A stretch of 64,000 bases of DNA, from the NCBI GenBank assembly GCA_002269645.1, contig NIVC01001874.1, positions 62,001-126,000 on the forward strand, in the 5' to 3' direction. The stretch comes from Macrostomum lignano. Its lineage: Eukaryota. Position numbers and translations under genes: made by a program. Below the pieces are notes generated by a model that was not told where the DNA came from, ran no database searches, and worked only from the letters and a program-made list of their open reading frames with translations. Shown here in pieces: positions 23,944 to 56,575 of the stretch; position 1 is the first letter of the stretch; every line of letters begins with the position of its first letter.

Positions 23944-26900
23944 GCTGCCCCGGCCTGGACCGCCGGCCTTCTAGCGGTGCTGCTGCACCTGCTGCTATTC
24001 TACTCCATATTTGACATCTACTTCACCTCCGAGCTGGTCAAGTCCCGATCGTTTGTTCAACTGCGCACCGCCGAATCGCCCTATCCCGCCGGGGCGGACT
24101 CGGGGGCGGATGCCGGCGCGGCAACAGCCAAGCGCCTAGTCCTGTTCGTAGCTGACGGCATTCGGGCCGACAAAGTGTTTGGCAACCTGGACGCGATGCC
24201 GTTTTTAAAGTAGGATTTTTCTTCGTTGCTTGTGCTTTATCGTTGTATTTTCTCTACTGTTAGTAGTTTATTAATAACTTTAAACTAATACAGAGGAATT
24301 CGGCTTGAGAATTGTTTTCAAATGAGTCGATGTAGACTAGTAATAACTAGATGGGACCAGTCAGCATATTTGCGCATAAGCTACTTCCAGTTCAGTAGGC
24401 AGTTTAACTGGACGCATTTTAACGTATTTTAAGACGATACTCATTTATTGGCCCTCTGACCCCCCCACCCCCAGCCGCTCGGTTTTATTACCCTCGTCGG
24501 TGTTCCAGTCTAAAGCTGGCATGTACATTCTCAGTGGCTCTGGCTGGCTAATGTACATTACAGCTGCACGAATAGCCAGTTGTGTTGGCGTCTGTGAGTC
24601 ACTCCAACTGCCTGTCTTTTTACAAAATAGCTGACGCATTCTGCCTTGCTACTGAGCTGAAAGTAGAGACACAGTTTTAGCCAATATGGCTGAGTGGCCC
24701 ATCCAGTTGTTATAGTATTTGAGGTTGTACCGGAAGGACTGTCTACAGAAGACGACTGGTTTGTCCAGGACTGCGGGTTGTAAAAGAACTTTTGGTACTT
24801 TATAAAAAAACTGTAGTAAGTTTTTTGTTTTTAGCTGCAAAAATTGACACCTTGTTCTGTGCAGAGTACATCCACAGGAAACCAATGTGCTGTGCTTGGT
24901 CCGAAGAGCAGAGGCAGTTTGACAAGTTTATTGGCAGAAACTGGCAAAGGAAATTGCAGCTCTTTCTAACTCTCCACAGTTTACTTTTTAAAGCAGTTTT
25001 TTCTGCTCCGCGAAAAACCGCATATTAGAAAAAACACCAAATCGGGAAATCTTAGGCTTTAAAATATTTTTAATATCGATTATTTTGACGACTCAATTTT
25101 AATGGAGTTTTATAGCCCTGACTTTCTAATTTTTTCATCACCCCGTGACTGCATGTACTCTTACCCCCGGATCTCATCACCCCGTGACTGCATGTACTCT
25201 TACCCCCGGATCTCATCACCCCGTGACTGCATGTACTCTTACCCCCGGATCTCATCACCCCGTGACTGCATGTACTCTTACCCCCGGATTTCATCACGCC
25301 CCGTGACTGCATGTACTCTTACCCCCGGATCTCATCACCCCGTGACTGCATGTACTCTTACCCCCGGATTTCATCACCCCCGTGACTGCATGTACTCTTA
25401 CCCCCGGATCTCATCACCCCGTGACTGCATGTACTCTTACCCCCTGATTTCATCACCCCGTGACTGCATGTACTCTTACCCCCGGATTTCATCACTCCGT
25501 GACTGCATGTACTCTTAACCCCTGATTCCATCACACCCCGTGACTGCATGTACTCTTACCCCCGGATCTCATCACCCCGTGACTGCATGTACTCTTACCC
25601 CCGGATTTCATCACCCCGTGACTGCATGTACTCTTACCCCGGATCTCATCACCCCGTGACTGCATGTACTCTTACCCCCGGATTTCATCACCGACCCCCG
25701 CAGAGGCGTGCTGCGCCGCTCCGGCTCGTGGGGCCTGTCGCACACCCGGGTGCCGACCGAATCGCGGCCGGGTCACGTGGCCATCATTGCCGGCTTTTAC
25801 GAAGACGTGGCCTCCGTGACTAAGGGTGAGCGGGGTCTCTGGCCTGCGATGCGGGTTAGTTGATAATGGCATCACTAAGGTGTCAGAATGGTGTGCCATT
25901 TTAGTTCAATAGTCTCCTAAGTCTTCACTAAACTAACAGTCCGACATACGGCCCTGAACAGTCCTGAACATCCGCCCTGAACATTCGCCCTGAACATCCG
26001 CCCTGAACATCCGCCCTAAACATCAGCCCTGAACATCCGCCCTGAACATCCGCCCTGAACATCAACCCTGAACATCAGCCCTGATCATCATCCCTAAACA
26101 CCAACTATGATCATCATCCCTAAACACCAACTATGATCATCAGCCCTAAACACCAACTATGATCATCAGCCCTAAACACCAACCATGATCATCAGCCCTA
26201 AACACCAACCATGATCATCAGCCCTAAACACCAACTATGATCATTATCCCTAAACACCAACCATGATCATCAGCCCTAAACACCAACTATGATCATCAGC
26301 CCTAAACACCAACCATGATCATCAGCCCTAAACACCAACTATGATCATTATCCCTAAACACCAACCATGATCATCATCCCTAAACACCAACCATGATCAT
26401 CATCCCTAAACACCAACTATGATCATCAGCCCTAAACACCAACCATGATCATCAGCCCTAAACACCAACTATGATCATCAGCCCTAAACACCAACTATGA
26501 TCATTATCCCTAAACACCAACCATGATCATCAGCCCTAAACACCAACTATGATCATTATCCCTAAACACCAACCATGATCATCATCCCTAAACACCAACC
26601 ATGATCATCATCCCTAAACACCAACTATGATCATCATCCCTAAACACCAACTATGATCATCAGCCCTAAACACCAACTATGATCATCAGCCCTAAACACC
26701 AACCATGATCATCAGCCCTAAACACCAACCATGATCATCAGCCCTAAACACCAACTATGATCATTATCCCTAAACACCAACCATGATCATCAGCCCTAAA
26801 CACCAACTATGATCATCAGCCCTAAACACCAACCATGATCATCAGCCCTAAACACCAACTATGATCATCAGCCCTAAACACCAACCATGATCATCAGCCC

Positions 26901-29900
26901 TAAACACCAACTATGATCATCATCCCTAAACACCAACTATGATCATCATCCCTAAACACCAACCATGATCATCATCCCTAAACACCAACCATGATCATCA
27001 GCCCTAAACACCAACCATGATCATCAGCCCTAAACACCAACTATGATCATCAGCCCTAAACACCAACCATGATCATCAGCCCTAAACACCAACTATGATC
27101 ATCAGCCCTAAACACCAACTATGATCATTATCCCTAAACACCAACCATGATCATCATCCCTAAACACCAACCATGATCATCATCCCTAAACACCAACTAT
27201 GATCATCATCCCTAAACACCAACTATGATCATCAGCCCTAAACACCAACCATGATCATTATCCCTAAACACCAACTATGATCATCAGCCCTAAACACCAA
27301 CCATGATCATCAGCCCTAAACACCAACTATGATCATCAGCCCTAAACACCAACCATGATCGTCATCCCTAAACACCAACTATGATCATCATCCCTAAACA
27401 CCAACCATGATCATCATCCCTAAACACCAACTATGATCATCAGCCCTAAACACCAACTATGATCATCAGCCCTAAACACCAACTATGATCATCAGCCCTA
27501 AACACCAACTATGATCATCAGCCCTAAACACCAACCATGATCATCAGCCCTAAACACCAACCATGATCATCAGCCCTAAACACCAACCATGATCGTCATC
27601 CCTAAACACCAACTATGATCATCATCCCTAAACACCAACCATGATCATCATCCCTAAACACCAACTATTATCATCAGCCCTAAACACCAACTATGATCAT
27701 CAGCCCTAAACACCAACTATGATCATCAGCCCTAAACACCAACCATGATCATCAGCCCTAAACACCAACCATGATCATCATCCCTAAACACCAACCATGA
27801 TCATCAGCCCTAAACACCAACTATGATCATCAGCCCTAAACACCAACCATGATCGTCATCCCTAAACACCAACTATGATCATCATCCCTAAACACCAACC
27901 ATGATCATCATCCCTAAACACCAACTATGATCATCAGCCCTAAACACCAACTATGATCATCAGCCCTAAACACCAACTATGATCATCAGCCCTAAACACC
28001 AACTATGATCATCAGCCCTAAACACCAACCATGATCATCAGCCCTAAACACCAACCATGATCATCATCCCTAAACACCAACCATGATCATCATCCCTAAA
28101 CACCAACCATGATCATCATCCCTTAACACCAACTATGATCATCAGCCCTAAACACCTGCCCTGAACACCTGCAGCACTGAAAGAAGCTCTTAACCATTTC
28201 TGAAGCCAGGTACAAAGCAGAATCACTCAATCACAATTGAGCGCAACATGCTGAGCACTCTAATCGCTTTCATTTAATGTTCAATTTTTTAAATTTTTCG
28301 CAGGCTGGAGCGAAAACGCCGTTGAATTCGACCACCTGTTCAACCAGTCGCAGCGCACCTGGGCCTGGGGCAGCCCGGACATTGTGGACATGTTCGGTAG
28401 ATCCGCGCTGCACGTTCGGGCGCATAGCTACCCACCCGGGGACGAGGAGTTCGGCAAGGGGAACACGAAACTGCTGGACGCCTGGGTGTTCGACAGGGTT
28501 GAGGTGCCTGCCGCTGCTGTGTGGGGCATTGAGATGGGGCATCCAGCTTCTCCGGTGCTATGGGGGATATTGAGATGGGGCCCAAGCTTCTCCAGTGCTG
28601 TTTGGGATATTCTTCTTTCTAAGAAACGTGAGCTAGTTCTATGAAAAACTTTCCAGGAGTTTCTCCTCGCTCACGCAACCAACGGTAGCCGCAGGGAACT
28701 GCAGTCGGAAGGCATTGTGCTGTTTCTGCACCTGCTGGGCATGGACACCTGCGGGCATTCGCTGAAGCCGCACTCCAGGTGTGTTACTTCTGTGTGTTGA
28801 TTACTTCCCACAATCGCTTAGTATCTCACTGAAAGCGTGTCAGAGGTCATTGTAAGGCTTTGAAAGCTAGACGTCACTGACCTTCTGACCCAACTGTAGG
28901 GCATTACAGAGGTCATTGACCCCTGACCCAACTGTAAGGCGTCACAGAGGTCATTGACCCCTGACCCAACTGTAAGGCGTCACAGAGGTCATTGACCCCT
29001 GACCCAACTGTAAGGCGTCACAGAGGTCATTGACCCCTGATCCGACTGTAAGGCGTCACAGAGGTCATTGACCCCCGATTTGGTCAATAATTCTCTGACT
29101 CACCCAGGCCCCTAAAACTGGACACTGGCATTGCCAACTCCGCCCCGCGTCGCAGGGACTGCCTGCTGAATCAGCAGTTCGTTGACAGCGGTGTGGCTCG
29201 TATCTCCGCTCTGGTGTCCCGGGTTTTCCCGGACAACCGGACAGCCTTCCTCTTCACCTCTGACCACGGCATGACCGACTGGGGCTCGCACGGGTCCGGC
29301 CTGACGGAGGAGACCGAGACTCCCTTTGTGGCCTGGGGCGCCGGGATCCGCGGGCCTCGACAGCAGCAACAGCTGTCGCCGGAGTCACCGGCGCCGCGAG
29401 CCTCTGCCAAGTACGCCGATGGTGCGGGCTCCCCCGGCTGGGACATTGGCCAGGCCGACCTGTGCCCGCTCATGGCCGCCTTAATTAACGTCAGCGTGCC
29501 CGTTAACAATGTGGTGAGGCTTCCTGTGACCCAACCTGTGCCCTTCCTGTGACCCAACCTGTGCCCTTCCTGTGACCCAACCTGTGCCCTTCCTGTGACC
29601 CAACCTGTGCCCTTCCTGTGACCCAACCTGTGCCCTTCCTGTGACCCAACCTGTGCCCTTCCTGTGACCCAACCTGTGCCCTTCCTGTGACCCAACCTGT
29701 GCCCTTCCTGTGACCCAACCTGTGCCCTTCCTGTGACCCAACCTGTGCCCTTCCTGTGACCCAACCTGTGCCCTTCCTGTGACCCAACCTGTGCCCTTCC
29801 TGTGACCCAACCTGTGCCCTTCCTGTGACCCAACCTGTGCCCTTCCTGTGACCCAACCTGTGCCCTTCCTGTGACCCAACCTGTGCCCTTCCTGTGACCC

Positions 29901-32900
29901 AACCTGTGCCCTTCCTGTGACCCAACCTTTGCCCTTCCTGTGACCCTCAACCTGTGCCCTTCCTGTGACCCAACCTGTGTCCTTCCTGTGACCCAACCTG
30001 TGCCCTTCCTGTGACCCAACCTGTGCCCTTCCTGTGACCCAACCTGTGCCCTTCCTGTGACCCAACCTGTGCCCTTCCTGTGACCCAACCTGTGCCCTTC
30101 CTGTGACCCAACCTGTGCCCTTCCTGTGACCCTCAACCTGTGTCCTTCCTGTGACCCAACCTGTGTCCTTCCTGTGACCCAACCTGTGCCCTTCCTGTGA
30201 CCCAACCTGTGTCCTTCCTGTGACCCAACCTGTCTCCTGTGACCCAACCTGTCTCCTGTGACCCAATCTGTCTCCTGTGACCCAACCTGTCTCCTGTGAC
30301 CTAACCTGTCCCCTTCCTGCCCGTCAAAAAATTTACCCGGAAACAAAAATTCCGGGTTGAGGCCCGGATCAGCAGAATTGGACCCGGATCACCATTTTTT
30401 CCGGGGTTCTGATCCGGAATATTACATACCCCGGAACAAAGCCTGATCCGGAGGAAGAACAGATGATCTGGGTCGATTTCCCGGAAAATGTCACCCAGAT
30501 CAGAGCTTGTTCCGGGTCAACTCCCGGATCTTTCCCGAATCAGGTGGGTCTGGAAATTGGAAAAAAGGGAATATATCCACTACCATGGGGATATTTAGAG
30601 GAAGCCTCCGATGGAAAACCGCTGAATACAGACCCCAGCAAATGGTTATCCCATCAGGCAATCCCTGGCATCCGTTTGGTCAGCGGCGCGATTTCCTCTT
30701 GGAAATATTCTGAGGGGTAATAAAGCCTCAGTATGATGAGAGTAGAATTGGCAATTGATCTGCTTTTCGGAGGCACTGTAGCGTCCGTAATGTGAGGCTG
30801 AGCCCATCCTCCGTACAGGTGACAATTGAAGAAATGTTGCGCCCTGATTGTGTGCGAGAGTTTTGACTTCCACTGGCATGTAGTCTGTCACAGCTGCTTA
30901 GTGTGTCAACGGGCTGAATGTTTCTATTGTCATATTTGACGATTAAAAGCATAAATCAGCCAACCATATTGTTTGGCACAGCTGGGTGTCTAGACTGAGA
31001 TTGTGCATAGTTCCAAATAGCTCTAACTGGCCCAGTATTTAAAGCAGCTTCACTATTAAGATAGACGCAAATCCGAATTATGTTGGTACATGCTCCATTG
31101 GTTTGTCTAAGGCTATGTTTACCTGCGATGGATAATCAATCCTCGCTTCTGTTGTGGCTCAAGGCAGCTGCTAAGCTGACCTGCGATGGATTAATAACTA
31201 TTGCATAAATTAAACCGGTATACCGGGATAAGATTGATATGGACATTCTGCTAGCTTCATTGATGCTCTTAGATTGACGAAAAGGTTTGTACTTTTTGCG
31301 CCAATAAAAACTTTGGCTTCTGCCTTAAGGAATGCTAGAATTCAAGCCGCTTATTGCAAAAATTTCTTTCCTTTTAATTGGTGACCCGGATCCAGACACT
31401 AATCTGTACGATTCGCCCGGAAACTGACCCAGATCGAACCCTAATCCGTGAAATTCACCCGGAACACTTGGTTCTTTTCCGGGTCAAATTCCCGGAAATC
31501 AGTGTTCCCCGATCCGGTATTTTCGCCCGGAACATATTTTGCTGATCCGGCTCTCAGTTCCGGAACAAAAAAGTATGTAAGCCCGGATCATGAACAAAAT
31601 CCGGATTCATTACAGAATAGGCAAAATTTCCGGGAAAACCCGGAACCCCCAATTGCTCACACCGGAATCCCCAATTGCTCAAACCGGAACCCCCAATTGC
31701 TCATACCGGAATCCCTAATTGCTCAAACCAGAATCCCCAATTGCTCAAACCGGAACCCCCAATTGCTCACACCGGAATCCCTAATTGCTCAAACCAGAAT
31801 CCCCAATTGCTCAAACCGGAACCCCCAATTGCTCACACCGGAATCCCTAATTGCTCAAACCAGAATCCCCAATTGCTCAAACCGGAACCCCCAATTGCTC
31901 ACACCGGAATCCCTAATTGCTCAAACCAGAATCCCCAATTGCTCAAACCGGAACCCCCAATTGCTCACACCGGAATCCCTAATTGCTCAAACCAGAATCC
32001 CCAACTGCTCACACCAGAATCCCCAATCGCTCAAACCGGAATCCCCAATCGCTCAAACCGGAATCCCCAATCGCTCAAACCGGAATCCCCAATCGCTCAA
32101 ACCGGAATCCCCAATCGCTCAAACCGGAATCCCCAATCGCTCAAACCGGAATCCCCAATCGCTCAAACCGGAATCCCCAATCGCTCAAACCGGAATCCCC
32201 AACTGCTCAAACCGGAATCCCCAACTGCTCAAACCGGAATCCCCAATCGCTCAAACCGGAATCCCCAACTGCTCAAACCGGAATCCCCAACTGCTCAAAC
32301 CGGAATCCCCAATCGCTCAAACCGGAATCCCCAACTGCTCAAACCGGAATCCCCAACTGCTCAAACCGGAATCCCCAACTGCTCAAACCGGAATCCCCAA
32401 TCGCTCAAACCGGAATCCCCAATCGCTCAAACCGGAATCTCCAACTGCTCACACCAGGGCCTGCTCCCAGTTGAGATTCTCAGCGGTCCGGCCAGCCGAA
32501 ATGCCTGGCAACTGGAGCGAAACGTCCGACAGCTGGCTGCGGGCTTTTTAACGAAGCGCCGGGAAGCCTTCGAGACCAGGATTTTGCCCGGCTTTGCCGA
32601 ATTTCCCGACCTGCCTGGCGACGCCGGGCCGGACAGCGAGCTGGCGATGGCCGCTGCCGCCGCCAGGGCTGGCGACTTGCGGCTGGCGGTGAGTGGGTTG
32701 GGCTTTGGTGGGATGGGTTGGGCTTTGGTGGGATGGGTTGGGCTTTGGTGGGATGGGTTGGACTTTGGTTGGAGTTATGGAGTGACGCTGGGAAGGAAGG
32801 GGTGACGCTGGGAAGGAAGGAGTGACGCTGGGAAGGAAGGGGTGACGCTGGGAAGGAAGGAGTGACGCTGGGAAGGAAGGAGTGACGCTGGGAAGGAAGG

Positions 32901-35900
32901 AGTGACGCTGGGAAGGAAGGAGTGACGCTGGGAAGGAAGGAGTGACGCTGGGAAGGGTGGAGTGACGCTGGGAAGGGTGGGATATGCAAAGTACGTATGT
33001 CAAAATTATTATTTTAGCAGATCAATTATCCATCATTATGAGTGCCCTTAAATTTTGATATCTAAATAAATCTTCTCTTTCTACTTAGTCAGTAGAGCAT
33101 TGTCGATTTTACAAGATGTTTTTACATTTCAAGCTGACCGAAGTTCAGATACTCAGCGCCCGTGCTTGACTTTCAATTATGAATATTAAATGGATAAGAA
33201 TCTAAGCCTGGGGGGAGCAATCTTGATATTAGTCTTTCTTCTCTTTAGGCCGTGGATTAGCCCTGATAGCCTTACATGGACGCTTTGCAGCCATTTCTGG
33301 GCTAGAGACAGTTTCCTATGTCACCTGAACTGACCCCAGGTAGAATTCGATAAAGTCATTTTCGTCTTTTTCTCCGCCCCTTAATTAAATTACTTGCCTG
33401 AGTTTTGCTCCCCCTGTGCCCGCCAGATAAACCGGCTGACGACTCTGGGCCGGCTTTGCGTTGAAGGCATGCGCTACTATCACAAATATGACCGCGCCTA
33501 CCTGGGGTGAGCTCAAACACGTTACAGCCAGCTCAGACACATTACAGTCAGCTCAGGCACATTACAGTCAGCTCAAACACATTACAGTCAGCTCAGACAC
33601 ATTACAGTCAGCTCAGACACATTACAGCCAGCTCATACACATTACAGTCAGCTCAGACACAATACAGCCAGCTCAAACACATTACAGTCAGCTCAGACAC
33701 ACTACAGTCAGCTCAAACACATTACAGCCAGCTCATACACATTACAGTCAGCTCAGACACAATACAGCCAGCTCAAACACATTACAGTCAGCTCAGACAC
33801 ACTACAGTCAGCTCAGACACATTACAGTCAGCTCAGGCACATTACAGTCAGCTCAAACACATTACAGTCAGCTCAGACACAATACAGCCAGCTCATACAC
33901 ATTACAGTCAGCTCAGACACATTACAGTCAGCTCAGGCACATTACAGTCAGCTCAAACACATTACAGTCAGCTCAGACACAATACAGCCAGCTCATACAC
34001 ATTACAGTCAGCTCAGACACATTACAGCCAGCTCAGACACATTACAGTCAGCTCAGACACATTACAGCCAGCTCAGACACATTACAGTCCGTCCAGACAC
34101 ATTACAGTCAGCTCAGACACATTACAGCCAGCTCAGACACATTACAGTCAGCTCAGACACATTACAGTCAGCTCAGACACATTACAGTCAGCTCAGACAC
34201 ATTACAGTCAGCTCAGACACATTACAGTCAGCTCAGACACATTACAGCCAGCTCAGACACATTACAGTCCGTCCAGACACATTACAGTCAGCTCAGACAC
34301 ATTACAGCCAGCTCAGACACATTACAGTCCGTCCAGACACATTACAGTCAGCTCAGACACATTACAGCCAGCTCAGACACATTACAGTCAGCTCAAACAC
34401 ATTACAGCCAGCTCAGACACATTACAGTCAGCTCAGACACATTACAGTCAGCTCAAACACATTACAGTCAGCTCAAACACATTACAGTCAGCTCAGACAC
34501 ATTACAGTCAGCTCAGACACATTACAGCCAGCTCAGACACATTACAGCCAGCTCAGACACATTACAGTCAGCTTAGACACATTACAGCCAGCTCAGACAC
34601 ATTACAGCCAGCTCAGACACATTACAGTCAGCTCAGACACATTACAGTCAGCTCAGACACTCGCCACCCATTGCCATCAGATTCTACATCCTGCTCTCCT
34701 TTGCACTATGGATAATTTTCGTTGCCGTACAAATCGGCAAAGCTCATCTGCCCGGCTTGGCCGGACAAAAATCGGCCGGACTGGCCGAGCCCGCGCGTCG
34801 CCTCTGTTGTGGAGCTTTGGCAGCCTTGGCCGGCCTGCACTGCTGCCTGCTGTACGGTGCGTGCGGGGGACAGGCAGTGGGATCGGGACTGATTGAGATT
34901 GAGTCAGGGTGAGATTGAGTCAGGGTGAAATTGAGTCAGGATGGGATTGAGTCAGGGTGAGATTGAGTCACGGTGGGATTGAGTCAGGGTGAGATTGAGT
35001 CAGGGTGAGATTGAGTCAGGGTGAGATTGAGTCAGTGTGAGATTGAATCAGGGTGAGATTGAGTCAGTGTGAGATTGAGTCAGGGTGAGATTGAGTCAGT
35101 GTGAGATTGAATCAGGGTGAGATTGAGTCAGTGTGAGATTGAGTCAGTGTGAGATTGAGTCAGTGTGAGATTGAGTCGGGGTGAGATTGAGTCAGGGTGG
35201 GATTGAGTCAGGGTGGGATTGAGTCAGGGTGAGATTGAGTCAGTGTGAGATTGAGTCAGTGTGAGATTGAGTCGGAGTGAGATTAAGTCAGGGTGAGATT
35301 GAGTCAGGGTGAGATTGAGTCAGGGTAAGATTGAGTCAGTATGAGATTGAGTGGATGAGATTGACTGAGATTAAGACGAGGGGAGAATGACTCAAGTGAG
35401 ATAGACCACGTGAGTTTTAGATGGGTCTCCTAAATGACGATAAACGCTTCTCGTACCAGCCAATCACAACCCGCTCACCTAACTTCCTTTGTTCGCTCCA
35501 GTGGGCAGCCGGCCGCCCCTGCACTACCTGTACTGCCTGACACCGCACTGCCTGGCTCTGTGCCTGCTGTCAGAGTCCGGCTTCCTGCTGGCCTGCTGGC
35601 GCGCCCTGCTCCGCCGGGTGCCGCTGACCGGCCGCCGCACTCCGTTGGGCTTCGTCTGCGACCTGACCTTCATCATCGTTGGCCTGGAGCTGTGCGCGCT
35701 CAGCTTCACCAGCCGCCTGATGCTTTCGGCTGGCGTGTTCTGGCTCGGCGCCAACTATGCCCGCCTGCTGTGGAGGCGCCCACGCCTGCGCCAGCATCGG
35801 CCAGTTGTGGCCAGGTTCTTCGCGTCCTGCCTGGCTCTGTGCGCCTTCCCGCTGCTGCCCGTGGTTGGCGGAGTGGTGCACCCCCTGCTGCTGTGAGCTC

Positions 35901-38900
35901 CGCTGCTGGGATTGGGTCTGCTGTGTGACTCCCGGTGCTGGGATTGGGTCTGCTGTGTGACTCCCGGTGCTGGGATTGGGTCTGCTGTGTGACTCCCGGT
36001 GCTGGGATTGGGTCTGCTGTGTGACTCCCGGTGCTGCTGTCAAGTCGCGCCCAGTAAACGATGACAAGGCCGCCCGTGGGCTTGGTTTGAGTCAAGTACG
36101 AGGTTGTGTATTTGAGACAAGCGAGATATTGCAATGACAGTGAGTTACGAGGTGGTAGGTGGCGAGACCAATATATAGGCTTAAAAGACAAACAAGTAAG
36201 TGGGCTTAAAACTCAGAATCGACCACTACTGAATATTATCATGTCAAGGGGGAGAGAGAGAAAGTACACAGAGCAGCGTACACTGGAGTAGGCCGGTTTG
36301 GTTAGTTAGGCTGGCTGGCTAGTTAGAGTTACTCAATATTGGACTCAGGTCAGTCAGGTGCAGTACAGTACATCAAAACACGCCCGGCACCTCAGCTGCA
36401 ATTGGGTCTGCTGTGTGACTCCCGGTGCTGGGATTGGGTCTGCTGTGTGATCCCCGGTGCTGGGATTGGGTCTGCTGTGTGATCCCCGGTGCTGCAATTG
36501 GGTCTGCTGTGTGACTCCCGGTGCTGCAATTGGGTCTGCTGTGTGATCCCCGGTGCTGCAATTGGGTCTGCTGTGTGATCCCCGGTGCTGCAATTGGGTC
36601 TGCTGTGTGACTCCCGGTGCTGCAATTGGGTCTGCTGTGTGATCCCCGGTGCTGGGATTGGGTCTGCTGTGTGATCCCCGGTGCTGGGATTGGGTCTGCT
36701 GTGTGATTTTGGGATGATGCCAATTTAAAGTCCAGATCCTCGAATCTTATTTGTTAAACTTGCTATAGACTACTGGATTGTAGATTTTTTGTGTCTCTAA
36801 CTAAACTCTTTTGCCTTTTGCCTTTGCAGAGCCGTGCACACTGCTGCTGCAGCGGCCTACTCTGTTGCCTACCTCAGATCTGAGCCGGACGCCAAGCTGA
36901 TTGTACCTCTGTCTGTGAGTGCTGTGAGATGGAGGGGTCTGTATGAGAGAGGGAGATGCGAGAATGAGGGAGATGAGAGTGATGGAGATGAGAATGAGGG
37001 AGATGAGAGTGATGGAGATGAGAGAATGAGGGATGTGAGAATGAGGAAGATGCGAGAATGATGGAAGGTGGAAAGAGGGGACACTGCATGTTAGGCGAGA
37101 GCAAGGTAGCGTGTAAGGAAGCAGACGGCCAAAAGAAGGCCGGAACATACAAATTATTGCAAAAGTGCATCAAAGTGGCGCACCCCGGTCGCCGCAGGCC
37201 GCACAGTGCCTCCTGGCCGGCCTGATATCGGTGAGCACCCACACCGTGTACCACGGCCGGGACAAGCCGCTTGTTCTGCAGGCCGCCAGCTGGTGCCTAC
37301 TAGCAGCTGTCTTCCCTCTGATTGGCTGGACCAACTCTCGCCGGGTGTCTGTCAGCCAATCAGCGACTGGGTACTCCGGCCTGGCACCTTCCGTAGCCCT
37401 GCTGCTGCCTGTGTACGGACTGATGTGCATCAGCTACGAGGGCCTGTTCCTGCTGACCCTGGCCGTGTTCCTGGAGGCCTGGACGCGGATTGAATGCCTG
37501 CTGCTGATGACGCTGGCGGACGGCAGTGACGGAGACTGTAGCGCCGATGAGGCGGACGCAAAGCTGGGAAAAGAGCGGCTGGCGGTTGAGCGAGGACTGC
37601 GGACTCTGGGCGGCGGACTGCGGCAGAACCTCTGCTTTGTATCCTTGCCGTTATATTTGGTGTCATTCCCTGGTCGTTGACTCTCAGGTCTTTGCTAATG
37701 GTGTTTTGACCCCTGGCTCTCAGGTCTTTGTTAGTGGGTTATTAACCCCTGACCCTCAGGTCTTTGTTGGTGGGTTATTGACCCCTGACCCTCAGGTCTT
37801 TGTTGGTGGGTTATTGACCCCTGACCCTCAGGTCTTTGTAATTGAATTCCTGCCTAAGTCTTAGGTCTTTGCTAGTGGATTATTAACCTCTAACTTTCAG
37901 GTCTTTGTTAGTGGATTATCTATATTGACCACTGACTTTCAGGTCTTTGTTTGTGTATCATGGATACCCCGTATAAAAGTGGCACTGTCACATTTTGACT
38001 ATGTGACAGTTCTGTGACACTCAAATGACTGTATCACATGTGACCCTTCATTGTGACACTCAAATGTGACACTCGAAGAAACTGTCACCAGTGTGACCGT
38101 CGATGTGACACTCATGTGACAGTCGAAAACTGTCTCATTGTCTCATGTGTGACAGTCAATGTGTTGTCATGTGAACCCAAGTTGTACAACATTGTTTCCT
38201 AAGCGGGATGCCAGTGAATCAGTGATTATGATTGATTTATTAGTTTGCTCCTGAAATATCGTGCATGTACGTGCTTGACTGGATAAGTGGATTGTATTGC
38301 AGATGTGTATAACAATACACGTGGAAATACTTATTTGACTTGATGATTATGCACGGAATTTGAGGCACGTAATTAACATGTCTAATAACCATACCACCTT
38401 TGATAGAAAAATGATGCATCGGAAATATTACTCTACCAAATTGTTAGTTTTTTTACCATTGCTCAAAACAACTAAACACACGAGTCACATGGACGGTCAC
38501 ACTGGTAACAGTTTTTCTGAGTGTCACATTTGAGTGTCACATCGACTGTCACACTGGTGACAGTTTCTTCGAGTGTCACATTTGAGTGTCACATCGACAG
38601 TCACACTGGTGACAGTTTTTCTGAGTGTCACATTTGAGTGTCACATCGACTGTCACACTGGTGACAGTTTCTTCGAGTGTCACATTTGAGTGTCACATCG
38701 ACGGTCACACTGGTAACAGTTTCTTTGAGTGTCACATTTTAGTGTCAGATCGACGGTCACAGCGGTGACAGTATTTGAGTGTCACATAGACGGTCACAGC
38801 GGTGACAGTACTTCACTGTCACATGGACGGTCACAGCTGTGACAGTTTATTTGAGTGTCACATTTGAGTGTCACATCGACGGTCACATTAATAACTGACT

Positions 38901-39699
38901 GTCACAAGCGTGACAAGCAGTGTCACAATTTCGACTGTCACCAAAAAATGTGACAGTCCCACTTTCATACGGGTACTCAACTTTGAAGGTCTTTGTCAAC
39001 ATAAATTGCCACGCAGTTTTCCTTAACTCTGTCAGGGCATCAGGTATTCCTGTTGCTGTTGTCATTTTTTGGCACAGGCAACATTGCCAGCATCAACTCG
39101 TGAGCGACCTACCTCTTATTGGTTTTTTTGCTTATCTCACAAATCAGTGTTTAAACTTCATTGACATCTCCTTCGTTGTTTCAGATTTGATACATCCTCT
39201 GTGTACTGCTTCATCACTGTGTTCAGCCCCTTCACCATGGGCTTTCTGATGCTGATCAAGGTGGGTTTGTACTGCTAGTAAACTGGCCCGAGTAATCGCC
39301 CTTCTCACCCCAAATAATCGCCCTTCTCACCCCAAATAATCGCCCTTCTCACCCCAAATAATCGCCCTTCTCACCCCAAATAATCGCCCTTCTCACCCCA
39401 AATAATCGCCCTTCTCACCCCAAATAATCGCCTTTCTCATCCCGCAGATACTACTGCCCATGCTGACAGTAGGCATGGCATTCGCCATTCTGGCCCGCTC
39501 GCTCCTGGTGCTGGAGGTGCTGCTGTTCTCGGACATTCTGGCCGTGCATTTCTTCTTGCAAATCCGAGACCACGGCTCTTGGCTGGACATTGGGACCAGC
39601 ATCGGGCACTATGTAGTTGTCATGGCAACAACCGTAGCGTCTGTGGCTCTGCTAGCTGCTTCTAGGCTGCTGCTGCACCAGAGGAGTCGGCAACTCTGA
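23944..39699 (+). CDS. PIGN: GPI ethanolamine phosphate transferase 1 (PIG-N/Mcd4), 14 coding exons: 23944-24209, 25704-25825, 28304-28503, 28657-28778, 29156-29513, 32458-32688, 33427-33506, 34681-34856, 35502-35892, 36830-36914, 37198-37638, 39044-39099, 39185-39260, 39448-39699; start-codon exon not firmly located
   Basis: All 13 introns are GT-AG and phase-consistent, giving 2856 nt (951 aa plus stop). Motifs: [45 protein letters not shown] (catalytic Thr), [61 protein letters not shown]. Confidence 0.96.
25135..25692. repeat. Intronic minisatellite, 39-bp unit TCATCACCCCGTGACTGCATGTACTCTTACCCCCGGATC
   Basis: About 14 copies ending 11 nt before the acceptor at 25703. Confidence 0.96.
25950..28170. 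repeat. Intronic minisatellite, 26-bp unit ATGATCATCAGCCCTAAACACCAACT, with 13-bp monomers (CCCTGAACATCCG) at the edges
   Basis: About 80 copies in PIGN intron 2. Confidence 0.97.
28875..29075. repeat. Intronic minisatellite, 38-bp unit CAGAGGTCATTGACCCCTGACCCAACTGTAAGGCGTCA
   Basis: About 5 copies. Confidence 0.92.
29520..30315. repeat. Intronic minisatellite, 23-bp unit TTCCTGTGACCCAACCTGTGCCC
   Basis: About 34 copies starting 7 nt after the 29514 donor. Confidence 0.97.
31640..32457. repeat. Intronic minisatellite, 22-bp unit ACCGGAATCCCCAATCGCTCAA
   Basis: About 37 copies; the last unit ends in the acceptor ...CTCACACCAG. Confidence 0.96.
32694..32985. repeat. Two adjacent G-rich 20-bp minisatellites (GGGTTGGGCTTTGGTGGGAT; GGAGTGACGCTGGGAAGGAA)
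   Basis: Begin directly after the donor at 32689. Confidence 0.94.
33510..34660. repeat. Intronic minisatellite, 20-bp unit ATTACAGTCAGCTCAGACAC
   Basis: About 57 copies filling ~98% of PIGN intron 7 (33507-34680). Confidence 0.97.
34888..35370. repeat. Intronic minisatellite, 16-bp unit GAGATTGAGTCAGGGT
   Basis: About 30 copies. Confidence 0.95.
35905..36710. repeat. Intronic minisatellite, 32-bp unit GCTGGGATTGGGTCTGCTGTGTGACTCCCGGT, split by a solo LTR
   Basis: Copies at 35905-36037 and 36395-36710. Confidence 0.95.
36038..36394 (-). mobile_element. Putative solo LTR, 357 bp, TG...CA ends, 5-bp target-site duplication GCTGC
   Basis: GCTGC|TGTCAAG...CACCTCA|GCTGC. Removing the element and one TSD copy restores the repeat variant GGTGCTGCAATTGGG. 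TATATA on the minus strand suggests the orientation. Confidence 0.8.
37680..37950. repeat. Intronic 36-bp minisatellite CTCAGGTCTTTGTTGGTGGGTTATTGACCCCTGACC
   Basis: About 7 diverged copies. Confidence 0.88.
37967..38973. mobile_element. TA-flanked MITE/foldback element with internal GTGACA/TGTCAC subrepeat arrays
   Basis: TA|CCCCGTATAAAAGTGGCACTGTCACATTTT ... AAAATGTGACAGTCCCACTTTCATACGGG|TA. Subrepeats at 37985-38170 are inverted relative to those at 38480-38950. Confidence 0.8.
39293..39447. repeat. Intronic minisatellite, 22-bp unit TAATCGCCCTTCTCACCCCAAA
   Basis: About 7 copies; the last one is the acceptor variant TAATCGCCTTTCTCATCCCGCAG. Confidence 0.95.
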
Positions 39700-42090: not shown

Positions 42091-43439
42091 GGCCTAATTG
42101 GGGCAGGTGTAATCAATTATTATTACTCTGTTTGAAGTGTTTTTCAGTAGCGCTCTTCTTACTGTGCTGGTATTCGCTCAGTACCCTATTACGCAGGCAA
42201 CCCTACCGGCGGGAACGTGTGTTTTGGGATGTCTGCAAGTGTGAGCTGTATTTCGGGATCTCTTATTGAATGTTTATTCTAGGATTTTTAATTGCTAGAG
42301 ATACGAAGCTCTACTCGGGATGAAGTTGTTTGCTGTTTACGGATTCTGCACGGCTCGCCCGCATTCGCGTCTCTCTCTCTCTCGCACGCACTCCTACGCA
42401 CTGCAACAGGTGTGCTGGGCTCAATGCTGCAGCGCCTGCTAATATCGCTAATGCAGCATGTGCCACTAAGCTCAATTTTGTCTCCGGTGTTAAATGAGCC
42501 GACCTAATCATCATATGCCAGGTGAACTCTCAAGATTTCCCAAGTGCACATATACACACCAGCCTTTTGCCAGCCTTTACTACTAGTATATTCCTTAATA
42601 AAGCAGACGACTTGCCCATTGAAAATCTCGCTCGGATGTCCATAGTCGACTGATGCTACCCGTTGAAGGTCCAGAAGCTCCGCCTGGGTGAAGGCCAGTG
42701 ACCAACGAAGTCAGGTTGACGTGCTGATGAAATTTGGAGGCTTGGGAAGGCCGCACCGAGGCGCAGTGCTGATTGGCGCACAGAGGTGTACTGAATGCAC
42801 TGGCGCTTATGGGAAAATCCGACCTGGCAGAATCGTTGAATGTCTGGACGGTCCGGAGGGCTGGCGACTTGATTCTTGTTTGAGAAGGTGCGCAACAAAA
42901 AGTTGGACCGTGTTCTGGTGTTTTGTGTGCCTGCGTTGCTTCCGTTCCGGCGCAGCAAAAAACTGTCGATGGGGGACCCCCTTGGCACGAGTAGTTCGAC
43001 TGTTAAAGCGAGGATATTTGGTCCAGTTTTATAACGATCAATAGTTTGCACATGTGAGTTTAGTTAGTTCGCTTCTACGAGCTAAGTTTGCTCGATGTTT
43101 TGACCTTAGCGAGCCTCGAAGCCAGATGTGTACTTCATTTTATTGTGTAGTTCACATGTACTTGTGAATTGTAAAACTGGGGGGGATGCTTAGTACATGT
43201 CGGCTAGTATCTGGGCAGACCTGAAAGCAGCTCTCGTTTACCATTCCCGCCACGTCTGCCTGTTTCTGTGCTGTAAAAAAATTGCCGCCAGGATATTTTT
43301 AGAGTTTTTCCCAGACTTCAAAGTGAAAATAATTTTATAGCGGCGTAGCAACCGAACCACTTCGAGTATCGCCACCTGGGCTCCAAGAAGCCAAATCGAT
43401 TTTCCCTAATCGTTTTTCTTGATCTGCTTCTTTTGAGCC

Positions 43440-43990
43440 TTCCATCTCTCACACCTGCATCCCCACCCTGAGCCTCTCCCCCGCCACCTCTCATCTGCAT
43501 CCCCACCCTGTGCCTCTCTCCATCTCTCACACCTGCATCCCCACCCTGTGCCTCTCCCCCGCCACCTCTCACCTGCATCCCCACCCTGTGCCTCTCCCCC
43601 GCCACCTCTCTCACCTGCATCCCCACCCTGTGCCTCTCTCCATCTCTCACACCTGCATCCCCACCCTGTGCCTCTCCCCCGCCACCTCTCACCTGCATCC
43701 CCACCCTGTGCCTCCCCCGCCACCTCTCATCTGCATCCCCACCCTGTGCCTCTCCCCCGCCACCTCTCACCTGCATCCCCACCCTGTGCCTCTCCCCCGC
43801 CACCTCTCACCTGCATCCCCACCCTGTGCCTCTCCCCCGCCACCTCTCACCTGCATCCCCACCCTGTGCCTCCCCCGCCACCTCTCACCTGCATCCCCAC
43901 CCTGTGCCTCTCCCCCACCACCTCTCACCTGCATCCCCACCCTGTGCCTCCCCCGCCACCTCTCACCTGCATCCCCACCCTGTGCCTCCC
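43440..43990. repeat. C-rich ~40-bp minisatellite (CTCTCACCTGCATCCCCACCCTGTGCCTCTCCCCCGCCAC)
   Basis: Direct reading. Confidence 0.94.
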
Positions 43991-46900
43991 ATGCTGTGCC
44001 TCTCCGCTCCCTGTAGTACAGACTTCACTATGTTTCTCACCATATTGACAATATTGCCCATTTAAAAGTACGGCAGCAAACCTGCAGCTGCCGCCTAGTT
44101 TTCTAAGCGCACTCGTCTGCTTCTCGCGCTTGATTTCCCAGTAACAGCTCGCATATTCAATACCGAACTTCTCACAAACTCATTTGCATTGTCAAACGCT
44201 GTTTTTATTTATAAATAATTTCTGGCTAGCATGGAAATATAGAGGAAGCCGGAAAATAGAATATTCGGAAGCTCAAAACAGCCAGTTCAAAACATGTAGC
44301 TTTTTGTTCTTTTTTGTTCACGGCGTAACGAAGTTGCTAGCCAAGTGATGGTGCTGTGCTAGCCGTGATGTAGGTGATGGTGCTAGACAGGTAGGTGATG
44401 GTGCTAGACAGGTAGGTGATGGTGCTATAGACAGGTAGGTGATGATGCTATAGACAGGTAGATGATGGTGCTAGACAGGTAGGTGATGATGCTATAGACA
44501 GGTAGATGATGGTGCTAGACAGGTAGGTGATGGTGCTATAGACAGGTAGGTGATGGTGCTATAGACAGGTAGGTGATGGTGCTATAGACAGGTAGGTGAT
44601 GGTGCTATAGACAGGTAGGTGATGATGCTATAGACAGGTAGATGATGGTGCTAGACAGGTAGGTGATGGTGCTATAGACAGGTAGGTGATGGTGCTATAG
44701 ACAGGTAGGTGATGGTGCTATAGACAGGTAGATGATGGTGCTAGACAGGTAGGTGATGGTGCTATAGACAGGTAGGTGATGGTGCTATAGACAGGTAGGT
44801 GATGGTGCTATAGACAGGTAGGTGATGGTGCTATAGACAGGTAGGTGATGGTGCTATAGACAGGTAGATGATGGTGCTAGACAGGTAGGTGATGGTGCTA
44901 TAGACAGGTAGGTGATGGTGCTATAGACAGGTAGGTGATGGTGCTATAGACAGGTAGGTGATGATGCTATAGACAGGTAGATGATGGTGCTAGACAGGTA
45001 GGTGATGGTGCTATAGACAGGTAGGTGATGGTGCTATAGACAGGTAGGTGATGGTGCTATAGACAGGTAGGTGATGGTGCTAGACAAGTAGGTGATGGTG
45101 CTAGACAGGTAGATGATGGTGCTGGACAAGTAGGTGATGGTGCTAGACAGGTAGATGATGGTGCTATAGACAGGTAGGTGATGGTGCTATAGACAGGTAG
45201 GTGATGGTGCTATAGACAGGTAGATGATGGTGCTGGACAAGTAGGTGATGGTGCTATAGACAGGTAGGTGATGGTGCTATAGACAGGTAGGTGATGGTGC
45301 TATAGACAGGTAGATGATGGTGCTGGACAAGTAGGTGATGGTGCTATAGACAGGTAGGTGATGGTGCTATAGACAGGTAGGTGATGGTGCTATAGACAGG
45401 TAGATGATGGTGCTAGACAGGTAGGTGATGGTGCTATAGACAGGTAGGTGATGGTGCTATAGACAGGTAGGTGATGGTGCTATAGACAGGTAGGTGATGG
45501 TGCTATAGACAGGTAGGTGATGGTGCTAGACAAGTAGGTGATGGTGCTAGACAGGTAGATGATGGTGCTGGACAAGTAGGTGATGGTGCTAGACAGGTAG
45601 ATGATGGTGCTATAGACAGGTAGGTGATGGTGCTATAGACAGGTAGGTGATGGTGCTATAGACAGGTAGATGATGGTGCTGGACAAGTAGGTGATGGTGC
45701 TATAGACAGGTAGGTGATGGTGCTATAGACAGGTAGGTGATGGTGCTATAGACAGGTAGATGATGGTGCTGGACAAGTAGGTGATGGTGCTATAGACAGG
45801 TAGGTGATGGTGCTATAGACAGGTAGGTGATGGTGCTATAGACAGGTAGATGATGGTGCTGGACAAGTAGGTGATGGTGCTATAGACAGGTAGGTGATGG
45901 TGCTATAGACAGGTAGGTGATGGTGCTATAGACAGGTAGATGATGGTGCTAGACAGGTAGGTGATGGTGCTATAGACAGGTAGGTGATGGTGCTATAGAC
46001 AGGTAGGTGATGGTGCTATAGACAGGTAGGTGATGGTGCTATAGACAGGTAGGTGATGGTGCTAGACAAGTAGGTGATGGTGCTAGACAGGTAGATGATG
46101 GTGCTGGACAAGTAGGTGATGGTGCTAGACAGGTAGATGATGGTGCTATAGACAGGTAGGTGATGGTGCTATAGACAGGTAGGTGATGGTGCTATAGACA
46201 GGTAGATGATGGTGCTGGACAAGTAGGTGATGGTGCTATAGACAGGTAGGTGATGGTGCTATAGACAGGTAGGTGATGGTGCTATAGACAGGTAGATGAT
46301 GGTGCTGGACAAGTAGGTGATGGTGCTATAGACAGGTAGGTGATGGTGCTATAGACAGGTAGGTGATGGTGCTATAGACAGGTAGATGATGGTGCTGGAC
46401 AAGTAGGTGATGGTGCTATAGACAGGTAGGTGATGGTGCTATAGACAGGTAGGTGATGGTGCTATAGACAGGTAGATGATGGTGCTGGACAAGTAGGTGA
46501 TGGTGCTATAGACAGGTAGGTGATGGTGCTATAGACAGGTAGGTGATGGTGCTATAGACAGGTAGATGATGGTGCTAGACAGGTAGGTGATGGTGCTATA
46601 GACAGGTAGGTGATGGTGCTATAGACAGGTAGGTGATGGTGCTAGACAAGTAGGTGATGGTGCTAGACAGGTAGATGATGGTGCTGGACAAGTAGGTGAT
46701 GGTGCTAGACAGGTAGATGATGGTGCTATAGACAGGTAGGTGATGGTGCTATAGACAGGTAGGTGATGGTGCTATAGACAGGTAGATGATGGTGCTATAG
46801 ACAGGTAGATGATGGTGCTGGACAAGTAGGTGATGGTGCTATAGACAGGTAGGTGATGGTGCTATAGACAGGTAGGTGATGGTGCTATAGACAGGTAGAT

Positions 46901-49198: not shown

Positions 49199-50548
49199 CT
49201 CCGGCTGTCCGGAAAGTCGCGAGAATGTATTTAAAAAACCAGTCAGAACTATCAGAAAACACGATAACAGCACTAGTTGGTAATGTAATCTTTCCTTGTG
49301 TTGATTACAGCTTGGCAATGGTCAACGAGTCGCTGAACCTCTCTTTTCAAGCAATCTTCGTCAAGGCCTCTTGCCTATTGCAACGCAGCTTCTCGAAATT
49401 GATTGTGGTCGCTGAACACTCGCCTGGAGAAATCAGTCTTCATCCAACTGAACAAAAAACGGTCGCACAAATTGAAGTCTGGGCTGTAAGGACTCTGAAA
49501 CACCAGCTGAACTCCACGGGACTCCATGTACTGCTGCACAGAACGGGCCACGTGAGGTCGCGCATTGTCCCACTGCCAAAGAACATCCGACAGGTGAATT
49601 GGCCTTGACCTGAGAGTACGCCATAGGTCTCCGGTGTGCCGAATGAATTCAACTATGCCATTTGCATCAACAGTTTGCTTTGGGGCTGTGGATTCAATGG
49701 AGAAGCGCTTGTTTGGAGTAAAAGCAACCAGAAGCATTGTCTTTGCATTGCCGACTGAGTGCCTGACAACCTGGGGCCGATGATCCCCTTGGCCAAGCCA
49801 GCACCTGTTGTTTTGCTTTGTGCCAGTGTTGTTCAGGTACACCCACGTCTCATCCTCCACCACGTACTTGTCGCAAAAGTTTTCCATGCCCTTTGTTGTA
49901 AAAAAGCCTGCGGATTTGCTTGGCACAATTGATGCGAGCAGTCTTGTTCTCCTCGGATAGAGCATGCGGAACCCAGACGGCAGAAACGTTTCGAAGGTGC
50001 AAATCCTCAGTCAAAATTTCGTGCACTGTTGTTTTTCCAACTTCCAAAGTCAGCGAGGTCTCGGACACAAACTTTTGGATCCTCTTCAACAAGAGCTCGG
50101 CAGGTTTCGATCAGTTCCGCTGTCCTTGTTGACCGTGGCCGGCCAGTCCGAGGAGCTGAGACCGGGGAAATGCTTCGTCACAGAACTTCGAATACCATCT
50201 GTAAACCGTTGACTGACCTGGTGCAGCATCTCCATAAACTTTAAGCAGCTCGTCATGGCAGCTGAGAGCGGAGATTCCAAGACGGTATCTAGCATAGGCA
50301 TAACCCTGGAAGTCTTCCATTTTGAAGAACTCGCTGTCAAAATTTTCAAGCTTGATCACCGCGTTGCATTTGCTATTGAGCACTTTATACTGAGCTCGCC
50401 CCTGCCCCCAATTTTGCTACTAGAGTAACAAGAATTTTCACCATAGACATCTATGAGTCTATTATTGAAATTTTATGTGTGCCACGTCAACAGCTTGCTG
50501 CTTTCTTGCTTAATTGACACATTCTCACGACTTTCCGGACAGCCGAAG
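49199..50548 (-). mobile_element. Full-length mariner (DD34D) DNA transposon, 1350 bp
   Basis: TA TSD at 49197-49198 and 50549-50550. 30-bp TIRs CTCCGGCTGTCCGGAAAGTCGCGAGAATGT / ACATTCTCACGACTTTCCGGACAGCCGAAG differ at 2 positions. Confidence 0.96.
49273..50320 (-). pseudogene. Mariner transposase, disrupted (about three frameshifts plus a TAG at 49375-49377)
   Basis: HTH start MEDFQGYAYARYRLG..VYRWYSKF, then PRTGRP, WVPHAL, DETW, DNARPH and YSPDFNLCD, with exactly 34 residues between the second and third D. Confidence 0.93.
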
Positions 50549-56265: not shown

Positions 56266-56575
56266 TAGTCTGTTTTAGATTTTTATATCGGCACACAGTC
56301 TGAACTGCTAACTGAAGACGGAATTGAAAAGCAATATTTATAGCGATTCAAAAAACCATGCCAAAAAGCAGAAAGCCAAACTGCAGACAATCAACACAGC
56401 ACTTTTATTTAATTTGTCTCTATTTACAATGATGCAATTATGTCAATTTTGATTAGCAAGCAAATTATAGAAATCTAAGCCGGTGAAAGAATTGATGCAA
56501 AACAAAGAAGATATTTTATATATGTAATAAATATGCATATTACAGAAAAGGTAAGGTAATATTACTCTTGAGAAA

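What the first reader, a model, noticed from the sequence alone, without database searches (positions are those of the whole stretch)
37639..39043. Textbook U12 minor-spliceosome intron, swollen to 1.4 kb by a minisatellite and a MITE
Seen: GTATCCTT 5' site, TTTTCCTTAAC branch site, no pyrimidine tract, and a spliced product matching PIGN. An out-of-frame AG at 39034-39035 must be skipped. Established: these are the U12 consensus signals, and minor splicing has been lost in several lineages (e.g. C. elegans, S. cerevisiae). Inference: this organism keeps a functional minor spliceosome, which is informative if it is a flatworm, and GPI-anchor synthesis depends on it.
Basis: partly seen in the sequence, partly recalled or inferred. 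Interest (0 to 1): 0.75.

Follow-up and report, generated by a model that had tools for sequence, protein, structure and literature searches.

The report
Conserved U12 intron in flatworm PIGN
This is a genuine minor-spliceosome (U12-type) intron in the PIGN gene of the flatworm Macrostomum lignano, but it is the same ancient intron already catalogued in human and mouse PIGN, so it is a sound yet ordinary finding.

Summary
These are GTATCCTT at 37639-46, TTTTCCTTAAC at 39017-27, an out-of-frame AG at 39034-35 and an in-frame AG at 39042-43. Joining 37638 to 39044 gives ...LRQNLCF|[19 protein letters not shown]. This matches Pfam PigN as a single stretch (E 5e-44) and aligns to PIGN of other animals without a gap.

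I scored the window against a matrix built from 76 human minor introns. The branch site is the best of 127,978 positions and equals the maximum possible score. The 5' site ranks second.

An intron at the same codon boundary carries U12 signals in a primate, a bird, a fish, an annelid, a scallop and one unidentified eukaryote. Human and mouse PIGN are listed as minor-intron genes with the same motifs.

The window comes from Macrostomum lignano or a near-identical relative, so the flatworm guess was right. Minor-spliceosome snRNAs are already documented in Schistosoma and Schmidtea, so retention in a flatworm is not new.

Repeats fill 1248 of the 1405 intron bases: a 36-bp minisatellite and a 1-kb element with terminal inverted repeats. 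The unique remainder is about 157 nt. No RNA data were available to confirm the junction. Interest is low.

The parts
37166..37638 (+). PIGN exon upstream of the U12 intron. It ends ...[10 protein letters not shown] on a complete codon. The 5' boundary is approximate: the acceptor AG is at either 37164-65 or 37174-75.
   Evidence: tblastn with scallop and other PIGN proteins covers 37168-37620. This single exon spans what are four exons in the scallop.
37639..39043 (+). U12-type (GT-AG) intron, 1405 nt, phase 0.
37639..37647 (+). U12 5' splice site, GTATCCTTG. It would pair with U11 and U6atac.
   Evidence: The matrix score is 13.05 bits, rank 2 of 127,978 positions.
37678..37919 (+). 36-bp minisatellite inside the intron: 6.8 copies, 81% matches. 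Degenerate copies continue to about 37950.
   Evidence: The unit is found nowhere else in the window.
37968..38973 (.). Non-autonomous transposon-like element, 1006 bp. It has 29-nt terminal inverted repeats (37968-96 and 38945-73), subterminal inverted repeats (38045-38114 against 38484-38882) and an internal 52-bp array at 38484-38787. It is flanked by TAC on both sides, a possible 3-bp target duplication.
   Evidence: It is the only copy in the window and its superfamily was not assigned.
39017..39028 (+). U12 branch-site box, TTTTCCTTAACT. The likely branch A is at 39025 or 39026.
   Evidence: The matrix score is 16.59 bits, rank 1 and equal to the maximum possible. The sequence is identical to the 12-mer scored 100 in the published table.
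39034..39035 (+). Proximal AG, 9 nt after A39026. It is out of frame and must be skipped for a functional product.
39042..39043 (+). Functional 3' splice site (CAG|G), 17 nt after A39026.
39044..39099 (+). PIGN exon [18 protein letters not shown](S), followed by a U2-type GTGAGC intron at 39100-39184.
39185..39260 (+). PIGN exon (S)[25 protein letters not shown]. The next intron, 39261-39447, is filled by a 22-bp minisatellite at 39293-39443.
39448..39699 (+). Last PIGN coding exon, ILLPMLTV...HQRSRQL, with the stop codon TGA at 39697-39699.
23944..29520 (+). N-terminal catalytic-domain exons of the same PIGN gene, lying around 23944-24209, 25702-25826, 28300-28500, 28655-28778 and 29150-29515. 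Boundaries are approximate.
   Evidence: Middle exons lie at 33418-33507 and 35492-35869.

Best explanation
The interval 37639-39043 is a U12-dependent GT-AG intron of the Macrostomum lignano PIGN gene, which encodes GPI ethanolamine-phosphate transferase 1.

Proposed mechanism:
- The 5' site GTATCCTTG would be read by U11 and later U6atac.
- The box TTTTCCTTAAC would be read by U12, with the branch at A39025 or A39026.
- The 3' end would be chosen by distance from the branch rather than through a pyrimidine tract.
- Functional mRNA uses CAG at 39041-43, 17 nt from the branch. This joins ...LRQNLCF to [16 protein letters not shown].

The intron is the orthologue of the minor intron known in human and mouse PIGN and was probably inherited at least from the bilaterian ancestor. 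In this lineage a 36-bp minisatellite and a 1-kb element with terminal inverted repeats inserted between the splicing signals. They raised the length from about 157 nt to 1405 nt without touching the signals.

Shown here: the motifs, the frame, the homology across the junction, the orthology of position and type, and the species.
Inferred: actual use of the junction in RNA, and the presence of working U11, U12, U4atac and U6atac in this species.
For: - Motifs and frame are as described.
- A matrix trained on 76 human minor introns, with PIGN left out, puts the branch box at rank 1 (the maximum score) and the 5' site at rank 2 of 127,978 window positions.
- The spliced product matches Pfam PigN in one stretch across the junction, E 5.3e-44. 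It aligns without a gap to bird, scallop and other PIGN proteins.
- The same codon boundary and phase carry U12 signals in six other species:
  - primate, AFFL|GTATCCTTTG...ATTTCCTTGAC+10;
  - bird, GTATCCTTTT...TTTTCCTTAAA+10;
  - fish, GTATCCTTGG...TTTCCTTTAC+17;
  - annelid, GTATCCTTTA...ATTCCTTAAT+13;
  - scallop, GTATCTTTTT...TTTTCTTAAC+8;
  - an unidentified eukaryote, GTATCCTTTT...CTCCTTGAC+10.
- Human and mouse PIGN are listed as minor-intron genes with CTT|GTATCCTTT / ATTTCCTTGACT and CTA|GTATCCTTT / ATTTCCTTAACT (PMC6717393 Table S2). The primate locus carries exactly the human 12-mers at this boundary.
- As a U2-type intron it would be poor: no G at -1, C at +5, and no pyrimidine tract.
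- Species: the M. lignano fragment P0043 is 100% identical over 89 residues of exon 23944-24210.
- Flatworm relatives have minor snRNAs.
Against: - No transcript evidence was available, so the 37638/39044 junction rests on homology and frame.
- The proximal AG lies 9 nt from the branch A. The scallop orthologue appears to use an AG only 8-9 nt from its branch box. The proximal AG is therefore not excluded on distance alone and may be used some of the time.
- No minor snRNA or minor-spliceosome protein of this species was examined. Rfam finds none in the window, which says nothing about the rest of the genome.
- M. lignano carries duplicated gene copies (my own knowledge). I did not show that this copy is the expressed one, although all exons I could map are open.
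Confidence: 0.93

Rival explanations
1. The signals are a relic. The intron is now removed by the major (U2-type) spliceosome because this lineage has lost or is losing minor splicing.
For: - At the same position other eukaryotes have plain GTAAGT...YAG introns (loci L083, L084, L087). Conversion of type at this site has therefore happened.
- No minor snRNA is seen in the window.
Against: - The branch box matches the best-scoring human 12-mer at all 12 positions, and the 5' site is GTATCCTT. Such a match after more than 500 million years implies selection by U12 and U11/U6atac pairing.
- The 5' site lacks the U2-type features and there is no pyrimidine tract.
- Other flatworms retain the machinery.
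Confidence: 0.03
2. The minor spliceosome uses the proximal AG (39034-35) for a substantial fraction of transcripts. The resulting frameshifted, unproductive mRNA lowers PIGN output.
For: - That AG is 9 nt from the branch A.
- The scallop orthologue seems to splice at an AG 8-9 nt from its branch box.
- Orthologues use distances from 8 to 17 nt.
Against: - Using this AG destroys the invariant FFGTGNIAS motif, so it cannot give functional protein.
- From my own knowledge, U12 3' sites are most often 10-15 nt from the branch, and closer sites are used poorly.
- There is no transcript evidence either way.
Confidence: 0.15
3. This PIGN copy is a decaying duplicate, and the intron signals are merely young enough not to have eroded.
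For: - From my own knowledge, M. lignano has recent large-scale duplication.
- The UniProt fragment differs at two residues in the later exons, which is compatible with an allele or a paralogue.
Against: - Every exon mapped is open, including the last exon through to its stop codon.
- Conserved motifs are intact.
Confidence: 0.04

Closest known systems
Minor (U12-type) intron of human PIGN and mouse Pign. The human intron is chr18:62085265-62088755, listed in the Minor Intron Database tables of Olthof et al. 2019 (PMC6717393).
   Same: - Same gene and same codon boundary: ...FF[LF] | [11 protein letters not shown].
- Same phase 0 and same GT-AG subtype.
- The same GTATCCTT 5' site and TTCCTT[AG]AC branch box.
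   Different: - Length is 1405 nt against about 3.5 kb in human and 3.0 kb in mouse.
- The content is lineage-specific: a minisatellite plus a transposon-like element.
- The 3' site is 17 nt from the branch against 10 nt in the primate, with an extra out-of-frame AG in between.
U12-type introns in general (GT-AG subtype).
   Same: - A rigid 5' site, RTATCCTT.
- A TCCTTAAC branch box close to the 3' end.
- No pyrimidine tract.
   Different: Nothing unusual. The position +9 is G where T is commonest. Vertebrate examples such as VPS16 also have G there.
Minor spliceosome of Platyhelminthes: Schistosoma mansoni and S. japonicum snRNAs (PMC2770079), and Schmidtea mediterranea U4atac and U6atac (PMC6312358).
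   Same: Same phylum. The presence of a well-kept U12 intron in Macrostomum fits the published retention of the machinery.
   Different: Macrostomum belongs to an early-branching free-living flatworm group (my own knowledge). I found no paper that mentions its minor introns.

Membership tests
U12-type (minor) spliceosomal intron | 5' splice site matching /RTATCCTT | tested here: met
   GTATCCTT lies at 37639-46. It scores 13.05 bits on a matrix from 76 human minor introns, rank 2 of 127,978 positions. The training median is 14.7 and the training minimum 4.3.
U12-type (minor) spliceosomal intron | Branch-site box TCCTTRAY within about 8-20 nt of the 3' splice site | tested here: met
   TTTTCCTTAACT lies at 39017-28 and has the maximum possible score, rank 1. 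The in-frame AG ends 17 nt after A39026.
U12-type (minor) spliceosomal intron | No polypyrimidine tract between the branch site and the 3' splice site | tested here: met
   The intervening sequence is TCTGTCAGGGCATCAG.
U12-type (minor) spliceosomal intron | Removal depends on U11, U12, U4atac and U6atac | not testable with these tools
   There are no RNA data and no access to the rest of the genome. Rfam finds no snRNA in the window. Related flatworms have the snRNAs.
U12-type (minor) spliceosomal intron | The splice junction is used in mature mRNA | not testable with these tools
   The support is indirect only. The junction gives a gap-free alignment to PIGN orthologues and a single Pfam PigN stretch. 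No near-identical spliced protein turned up in the protein collection.
Orthologue of the vertebrate PIGN minor intron | Same position and phase in the aligned protein | tested here: met
   The primate, bird, fish, annelid and scallop loci and locus L002 are all split between ...F[FL] and [VI]F, seven residues before FFGTGN, in phase 0. The primate 12-mers equal the published human ones.
PIGN / Mcd4 family (Pfam PF04987 PigN plus an N-terminal phosphodiesterase-type domain) | Significant match to PigN, and to the catalytic domain | tested here: met
   PigN scores E 5.3e-44, 151 bits, against a cut-off of 25.4. The N-terminal exons hit PIGN proteins at E about 1e-90 with PF01663.
MITE (miniature inverted-repeat transposable element) | Terminal inverted repeats and no transposase gene | tested here: met
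   The terminal inverted repeats are 29 nt long and 93% complementary. Only short reading frames lie inside the element.
MITE (miniature inverted-repeat transposable element) | Many dispersed copies in the genome, a target-site duplication, and small size (usually under 800 bp) | tested here: inconclusive
   It is the only copy in 64 kb. At 1006 bp it is large for a MITE. The flanking TAC...TAC may be a 3-bp duplication, but that is too short to count as evidence.

The most novel reading that the evidence does not exclude
The out-of-frame AG lies 9 nt from the branch point and 8 nt ahead of the productive AG. It may be used by the minor spliceosome as a decoy, making PIGN output in this flatworm tunable through unproductive splicing. 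The 1.2 kb of repeats inserted into a formerly compact minor intron may add to slow or retained splicing.
Probability: 0.1. Interest if true: 0.35.

Novelty: new member of a known kind. Interest (0 to 1): 0.2.

Why it matters
It adds one clean, comparatively verified U12-type intron for Macrostomum lignano, a laboratory model flatworm. It also shows that the PIGN minor intron probably dates back at least to the bilaterian ancestor.

It is a handy marker. Annotation pipelines that assume GT-AG/U2 rules may mis-model this exon pair, and the intron could serve as a read-out if minor splicing is perturbed in this animal.

It does not change what is known about the distribution of the minor spliceosome, which is already documented in flatworms.

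Tried and rejected
- Rfam scan of the window for U11, U12, U4atac and U6atac gave no hits. This is uninformative, because those genes need not lie here.
- The second TTCCTTAAC, at 23625 (+), has an AG two bases after it, has no matching 5' site, and lies about 300 nt upstream of the first mapped PIGN exon. I treat it as chance.
- The best-scoring 5' site, ATATCCTTC at 16425, lies at the end of a minisatellite with no reading frame. I treat it as chance.
- Literature searches for Macrostomum with 'minor spliceosome', 'U12' or 'minor introns' found nothing relevant. The first PIGN searches hit only the surname 'Pigneux'.
- No solved PIGN structure could be used to read off the human sequence.
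- The albatross contig (L088) ends before the C-terminal exons.
- The fungal loci L005-L007 and most of the metagenome loci are intronless at this site, so they say nothing about intron type.
- I looked for other copies of the transposon-like element and of the 36-bp unit in the window and found none.
- I did not search for minor-spliceosome proteins of M. lignano. I had no trustworthy query sequence, and the protein search lists only the best 120 hits.
Full report
**1. What is in the sequence**

- GTATCCTT lies at 37639-37646 and TTTTCCTTAAC at 39017-39027.
- There is an AG at 39034-35 and a second AG at 39042-43.
- The 16 bases between the branch box and the second AG, TCTGTCAGGGCATCAG, are not pyrimidine-rich.
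- The upstream reading frame ends on a whole codon, ...[10 protein letters not shown], so the intron is phase 0.
- An exon starting at 39044 reads [19 protein letters not shown]. An exon starting at 39036 would read GIRYSCCCC and is out of frame.

The downstream structure is ordinary.
- A U2-type GTGAGC intron lies at 39100-39184.
- Exon 39185-39260 follows.
- The next intron, 39261-39447, is filled by a 22-bp minisatellite.
- The last exon ends with TGA at 39697-99.

**2. Is it more than chance?**

Each motif alone is not remarkable.
- GTATCCTT is expected 1.7 times per shuffled window and occurs once.
- TTCCTTAAC occurs twice.

To put numbers on the match, I built position weight matrices from the 5' site and branch-site 12-mers of 76 human minor introns. 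These came from Table S2 of Olthof et al. 2019 (PMC6717393), with PIGN left out. I scored every position of both strands.
- The branch box TTTTCCTTAACT is the best of 127,978 positions. It equals the maximum possible score and is identical to the 12-mer that the published table scores 100.
- The 5' site TTTGTATCCTTG ranks second.
- The rank-1 5' site, ATATCCTTC at 16425, sits at the end of a minisatellite with no exon. This shows that one motif alone can be a chance match.

The weight of the evidence is in the combination. The two best signals in 64 kb bracket exactly the junction that restores the PIGN reading frame.

**3. The gene**

- The spliced C-terminal product matches Pfam PigN in one uninterrupted stretch across the junction (E 5.3e-44).
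- It aligns to bird, scallop and other PIGN sequences with no gap at the junction.
- Homologues found with it are all PigN-domain proteins.
- N-terminal catalytic-domain exons lie on the same strand from about 23944 to 29520. Middle exons lie at 33418-33507 and 35492-35869.
- All exons I could map are open.

**4. The organism**

The best hit of the N-terminal query is a UniProt fragment of Macrostomum lignano PIGN.
- It is 100% identical over the 89 residues of exon 23944-24210.
- It even follows the window's sequence where that gene model reads through into an intron.

The window is therefore M. lignano or something nearly identical.

**5. Orthology of the intron**

I fetched PIGN loci from other species and read the same boundary. 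U12-type signals occur at the same codon boundary and phase in:

| Species (locus) | 5' side | Branch box and distance to the 3' end | Intron length |
|---|---|---|---|
| Primate Plecturocebus (L092) | ...AFFL\|GTATCCTTTG | ATTTCCTTGAC, 10 nt to TAG\|VFFLV | 3176 nt |
| Bird Fulmarus (L090) | GTATCCTTTT | TTTTCCTTAAA, 10 nt | 2698 nt |
| Fish Ameca (L089) | GTATCCTTGG | TTTCCTTTAC, 17 nt | 210 nt |
| Annelid Paralvinella (L091) | GTATCCTTTA | ATTCCTTAAT, 13 nt | about 147 nt |
| Scallop Ylistrum (L001) | GTATCTTTTT | TTTTCTTAAC, 8 nt | 365 nt |
| Unidentified eukaryote (L002) | GTATCCTTTT | CTCCTTGAC, 10 nt | about 180 nt |

- The primate 12-mers are exactly those published for the human PIGN minor intron. 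Mouse Pign is listed too.
- At the same position some other eukaryotes have plain GTAAGT introns (L083, L084, L087).
- A wasp, fungi and many protists have no intron there.

The position is therefore ancient, and the U12 type probably dates back at least to the bilaterian ancestor. Conversions and losses have occurred elsewhere.

In Macrostomum the neighbouring introns present in the scallop have been lost. One exon, 37166-37638, covers four scallop exons. The U12 intron was kept.

**6. The repeats**

- Tandem Repeats Finder reports a 36-bp array at 37678-37919, 6.8 copies.
- The repeat finder reports 29-nt terminal inverted repeats at 37968-96 and 38945-73, 93% complementary. Subterminal inverted repeats and a 52-bp internal array lie between them.
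- Together the two repeats occupy 1248 of the 1405 bases. The unique remainder is about 157 nt, close to the length of the annelid and L002 introns. 'Swollen' is a fair description.
- The element is 1006 bp and is the only copy in the window. Calling it a MITE is reasonable by structure, but the family is not demonstrated.
- Both insertions lie clear of the signals. The minisatellite begins 39 nt after the 5' site. The element ends 44 nt before the branch box.

**7. How it most likely works**

Removal is most likely by the minor spliceosome.
- U11 and then U6atac pair with GTATCCTT.
- U12 pairs with TCCTTAAC, leaving A39025 or A39026 as the branch.
- The 3' site is chosen by distance from the branch.

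As a U2-type intron it would be weak. It has T rather than G at -1, C at +5, and no pyrimidine tract.

The productive 3' site is 17 nt from the branch, the same distance as in the fish. The proximal AG is 9 nt away. The scallop appears to use an AG 8-9 nt from its branch box, so I cannot rule out some use of the proximal AG. That product would be frameshifted and would lack the invariant FFGTGNIAS motif.

These steps are inferred. No RNA data were available.

**8. Comparison with what is known, and novelty**

- Minor snRNAs are published for Schistosoma (PMC2770079) and for Schmidtea and other flatworms (PMC6312358).
- A pan-eukaryotic survey reports minor introns in Schistosoma (PMC10639083).
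- PIGN is a catalogued minor-intron gene in human and mouse.
- I found no paper that mentions minor introns in Macrostomum.

This is a new member of a known kind: the expected orthologue in one more species.

The statement that GPI-anchor synthesis depends on this intron should be narrowed to PIGN expression. From my own knowledge, mammalian cells without PIGN still make surface GPI-anchored proteins at reduced levels.

**9. Verdict**

The finding is correct and neatly conserved, but ordinary. Interest is 0.2.

Noticed in passing
window 1-64000 (for example 3594-5738, 7176-7700, 10462-11108, 12139-13536, 21820-22440, 25102-25656, 29550-30350, 31620-32470, 33500-34700, 43318-44048, 53553-54187, 54785-56296): The window is packed with long minisatellite arrays that produce spurious long ORFs on both strands. 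Almost every PIGN intron carries one. From my own knowledge, this fits the very repeat-rich M. lignano genome.
   Followed up: partly
window 37166-37638, compared with L001 6586-18242: One Macrostomum exon covers what are four exons in the scallop PIGN. The neighbouring U2-type introns were lost, while the U12-type intron just downstream was kept.
   Followed up: partly
L002 5500-5625: In the unidentified eukaryote's PIGN, a second intron begins GTATCCTTG after ...ILLSTS, just before the YEG motif. Its branch region is only TTTTCGTAAC. It may be a second or degenerate U12-type intron. Macrostomum has no intron at that position.
   Followed up: no
window 28500-28560, and protein P0043: The UniProt M. 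lignano PIGN fragment A0A1I... (P0043) appears to be mis-modelled. It skips the exon start [16 protein letters not shown]. It also reads through the 5' splice site after ...VFDRVE into intron sequence ([11 protein letters not shown]...).
   Followed up: partly
window 49375-49965 (-): An ORF of 196 aa matches the DDE_3 transposase domain (PF13358, E 4.7e-08). It is probably a fragment of a Tc1/mariner-like transposon.
   Followed up: partly
window 56576-57010 (-): An ORF of 144 aa carries a TALE-type homeodomain (Homeobox_KN, E 1.6e-08), so a homeobox gene lies downstream of PIGN.
   Followed up: no
window 16422-16433 (+): TTCATATCCTTC is the best-scoring U12-like 5' site in the window. It sits at the end of a tandem repeat with no reading frame, so it serves as an example of a chance match.
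   Followed up: yes
window 23932-23960 (+): The first mapped PIGN exon has no start codon in frame. It is preceded by CCTCCCTCAG, so the initiator ATG probably lies in a short exon further upstream that I did not locate.
   Followed up: no
L083, L084, L087 (metagenome contigs): These PIGN genes have a U2-type GTAAGT intron at exactly the boundary that is U12-type in animals. They may be examples of conversion between intron types at an ancient position. The organisms were not identified.
   Followed up: partly
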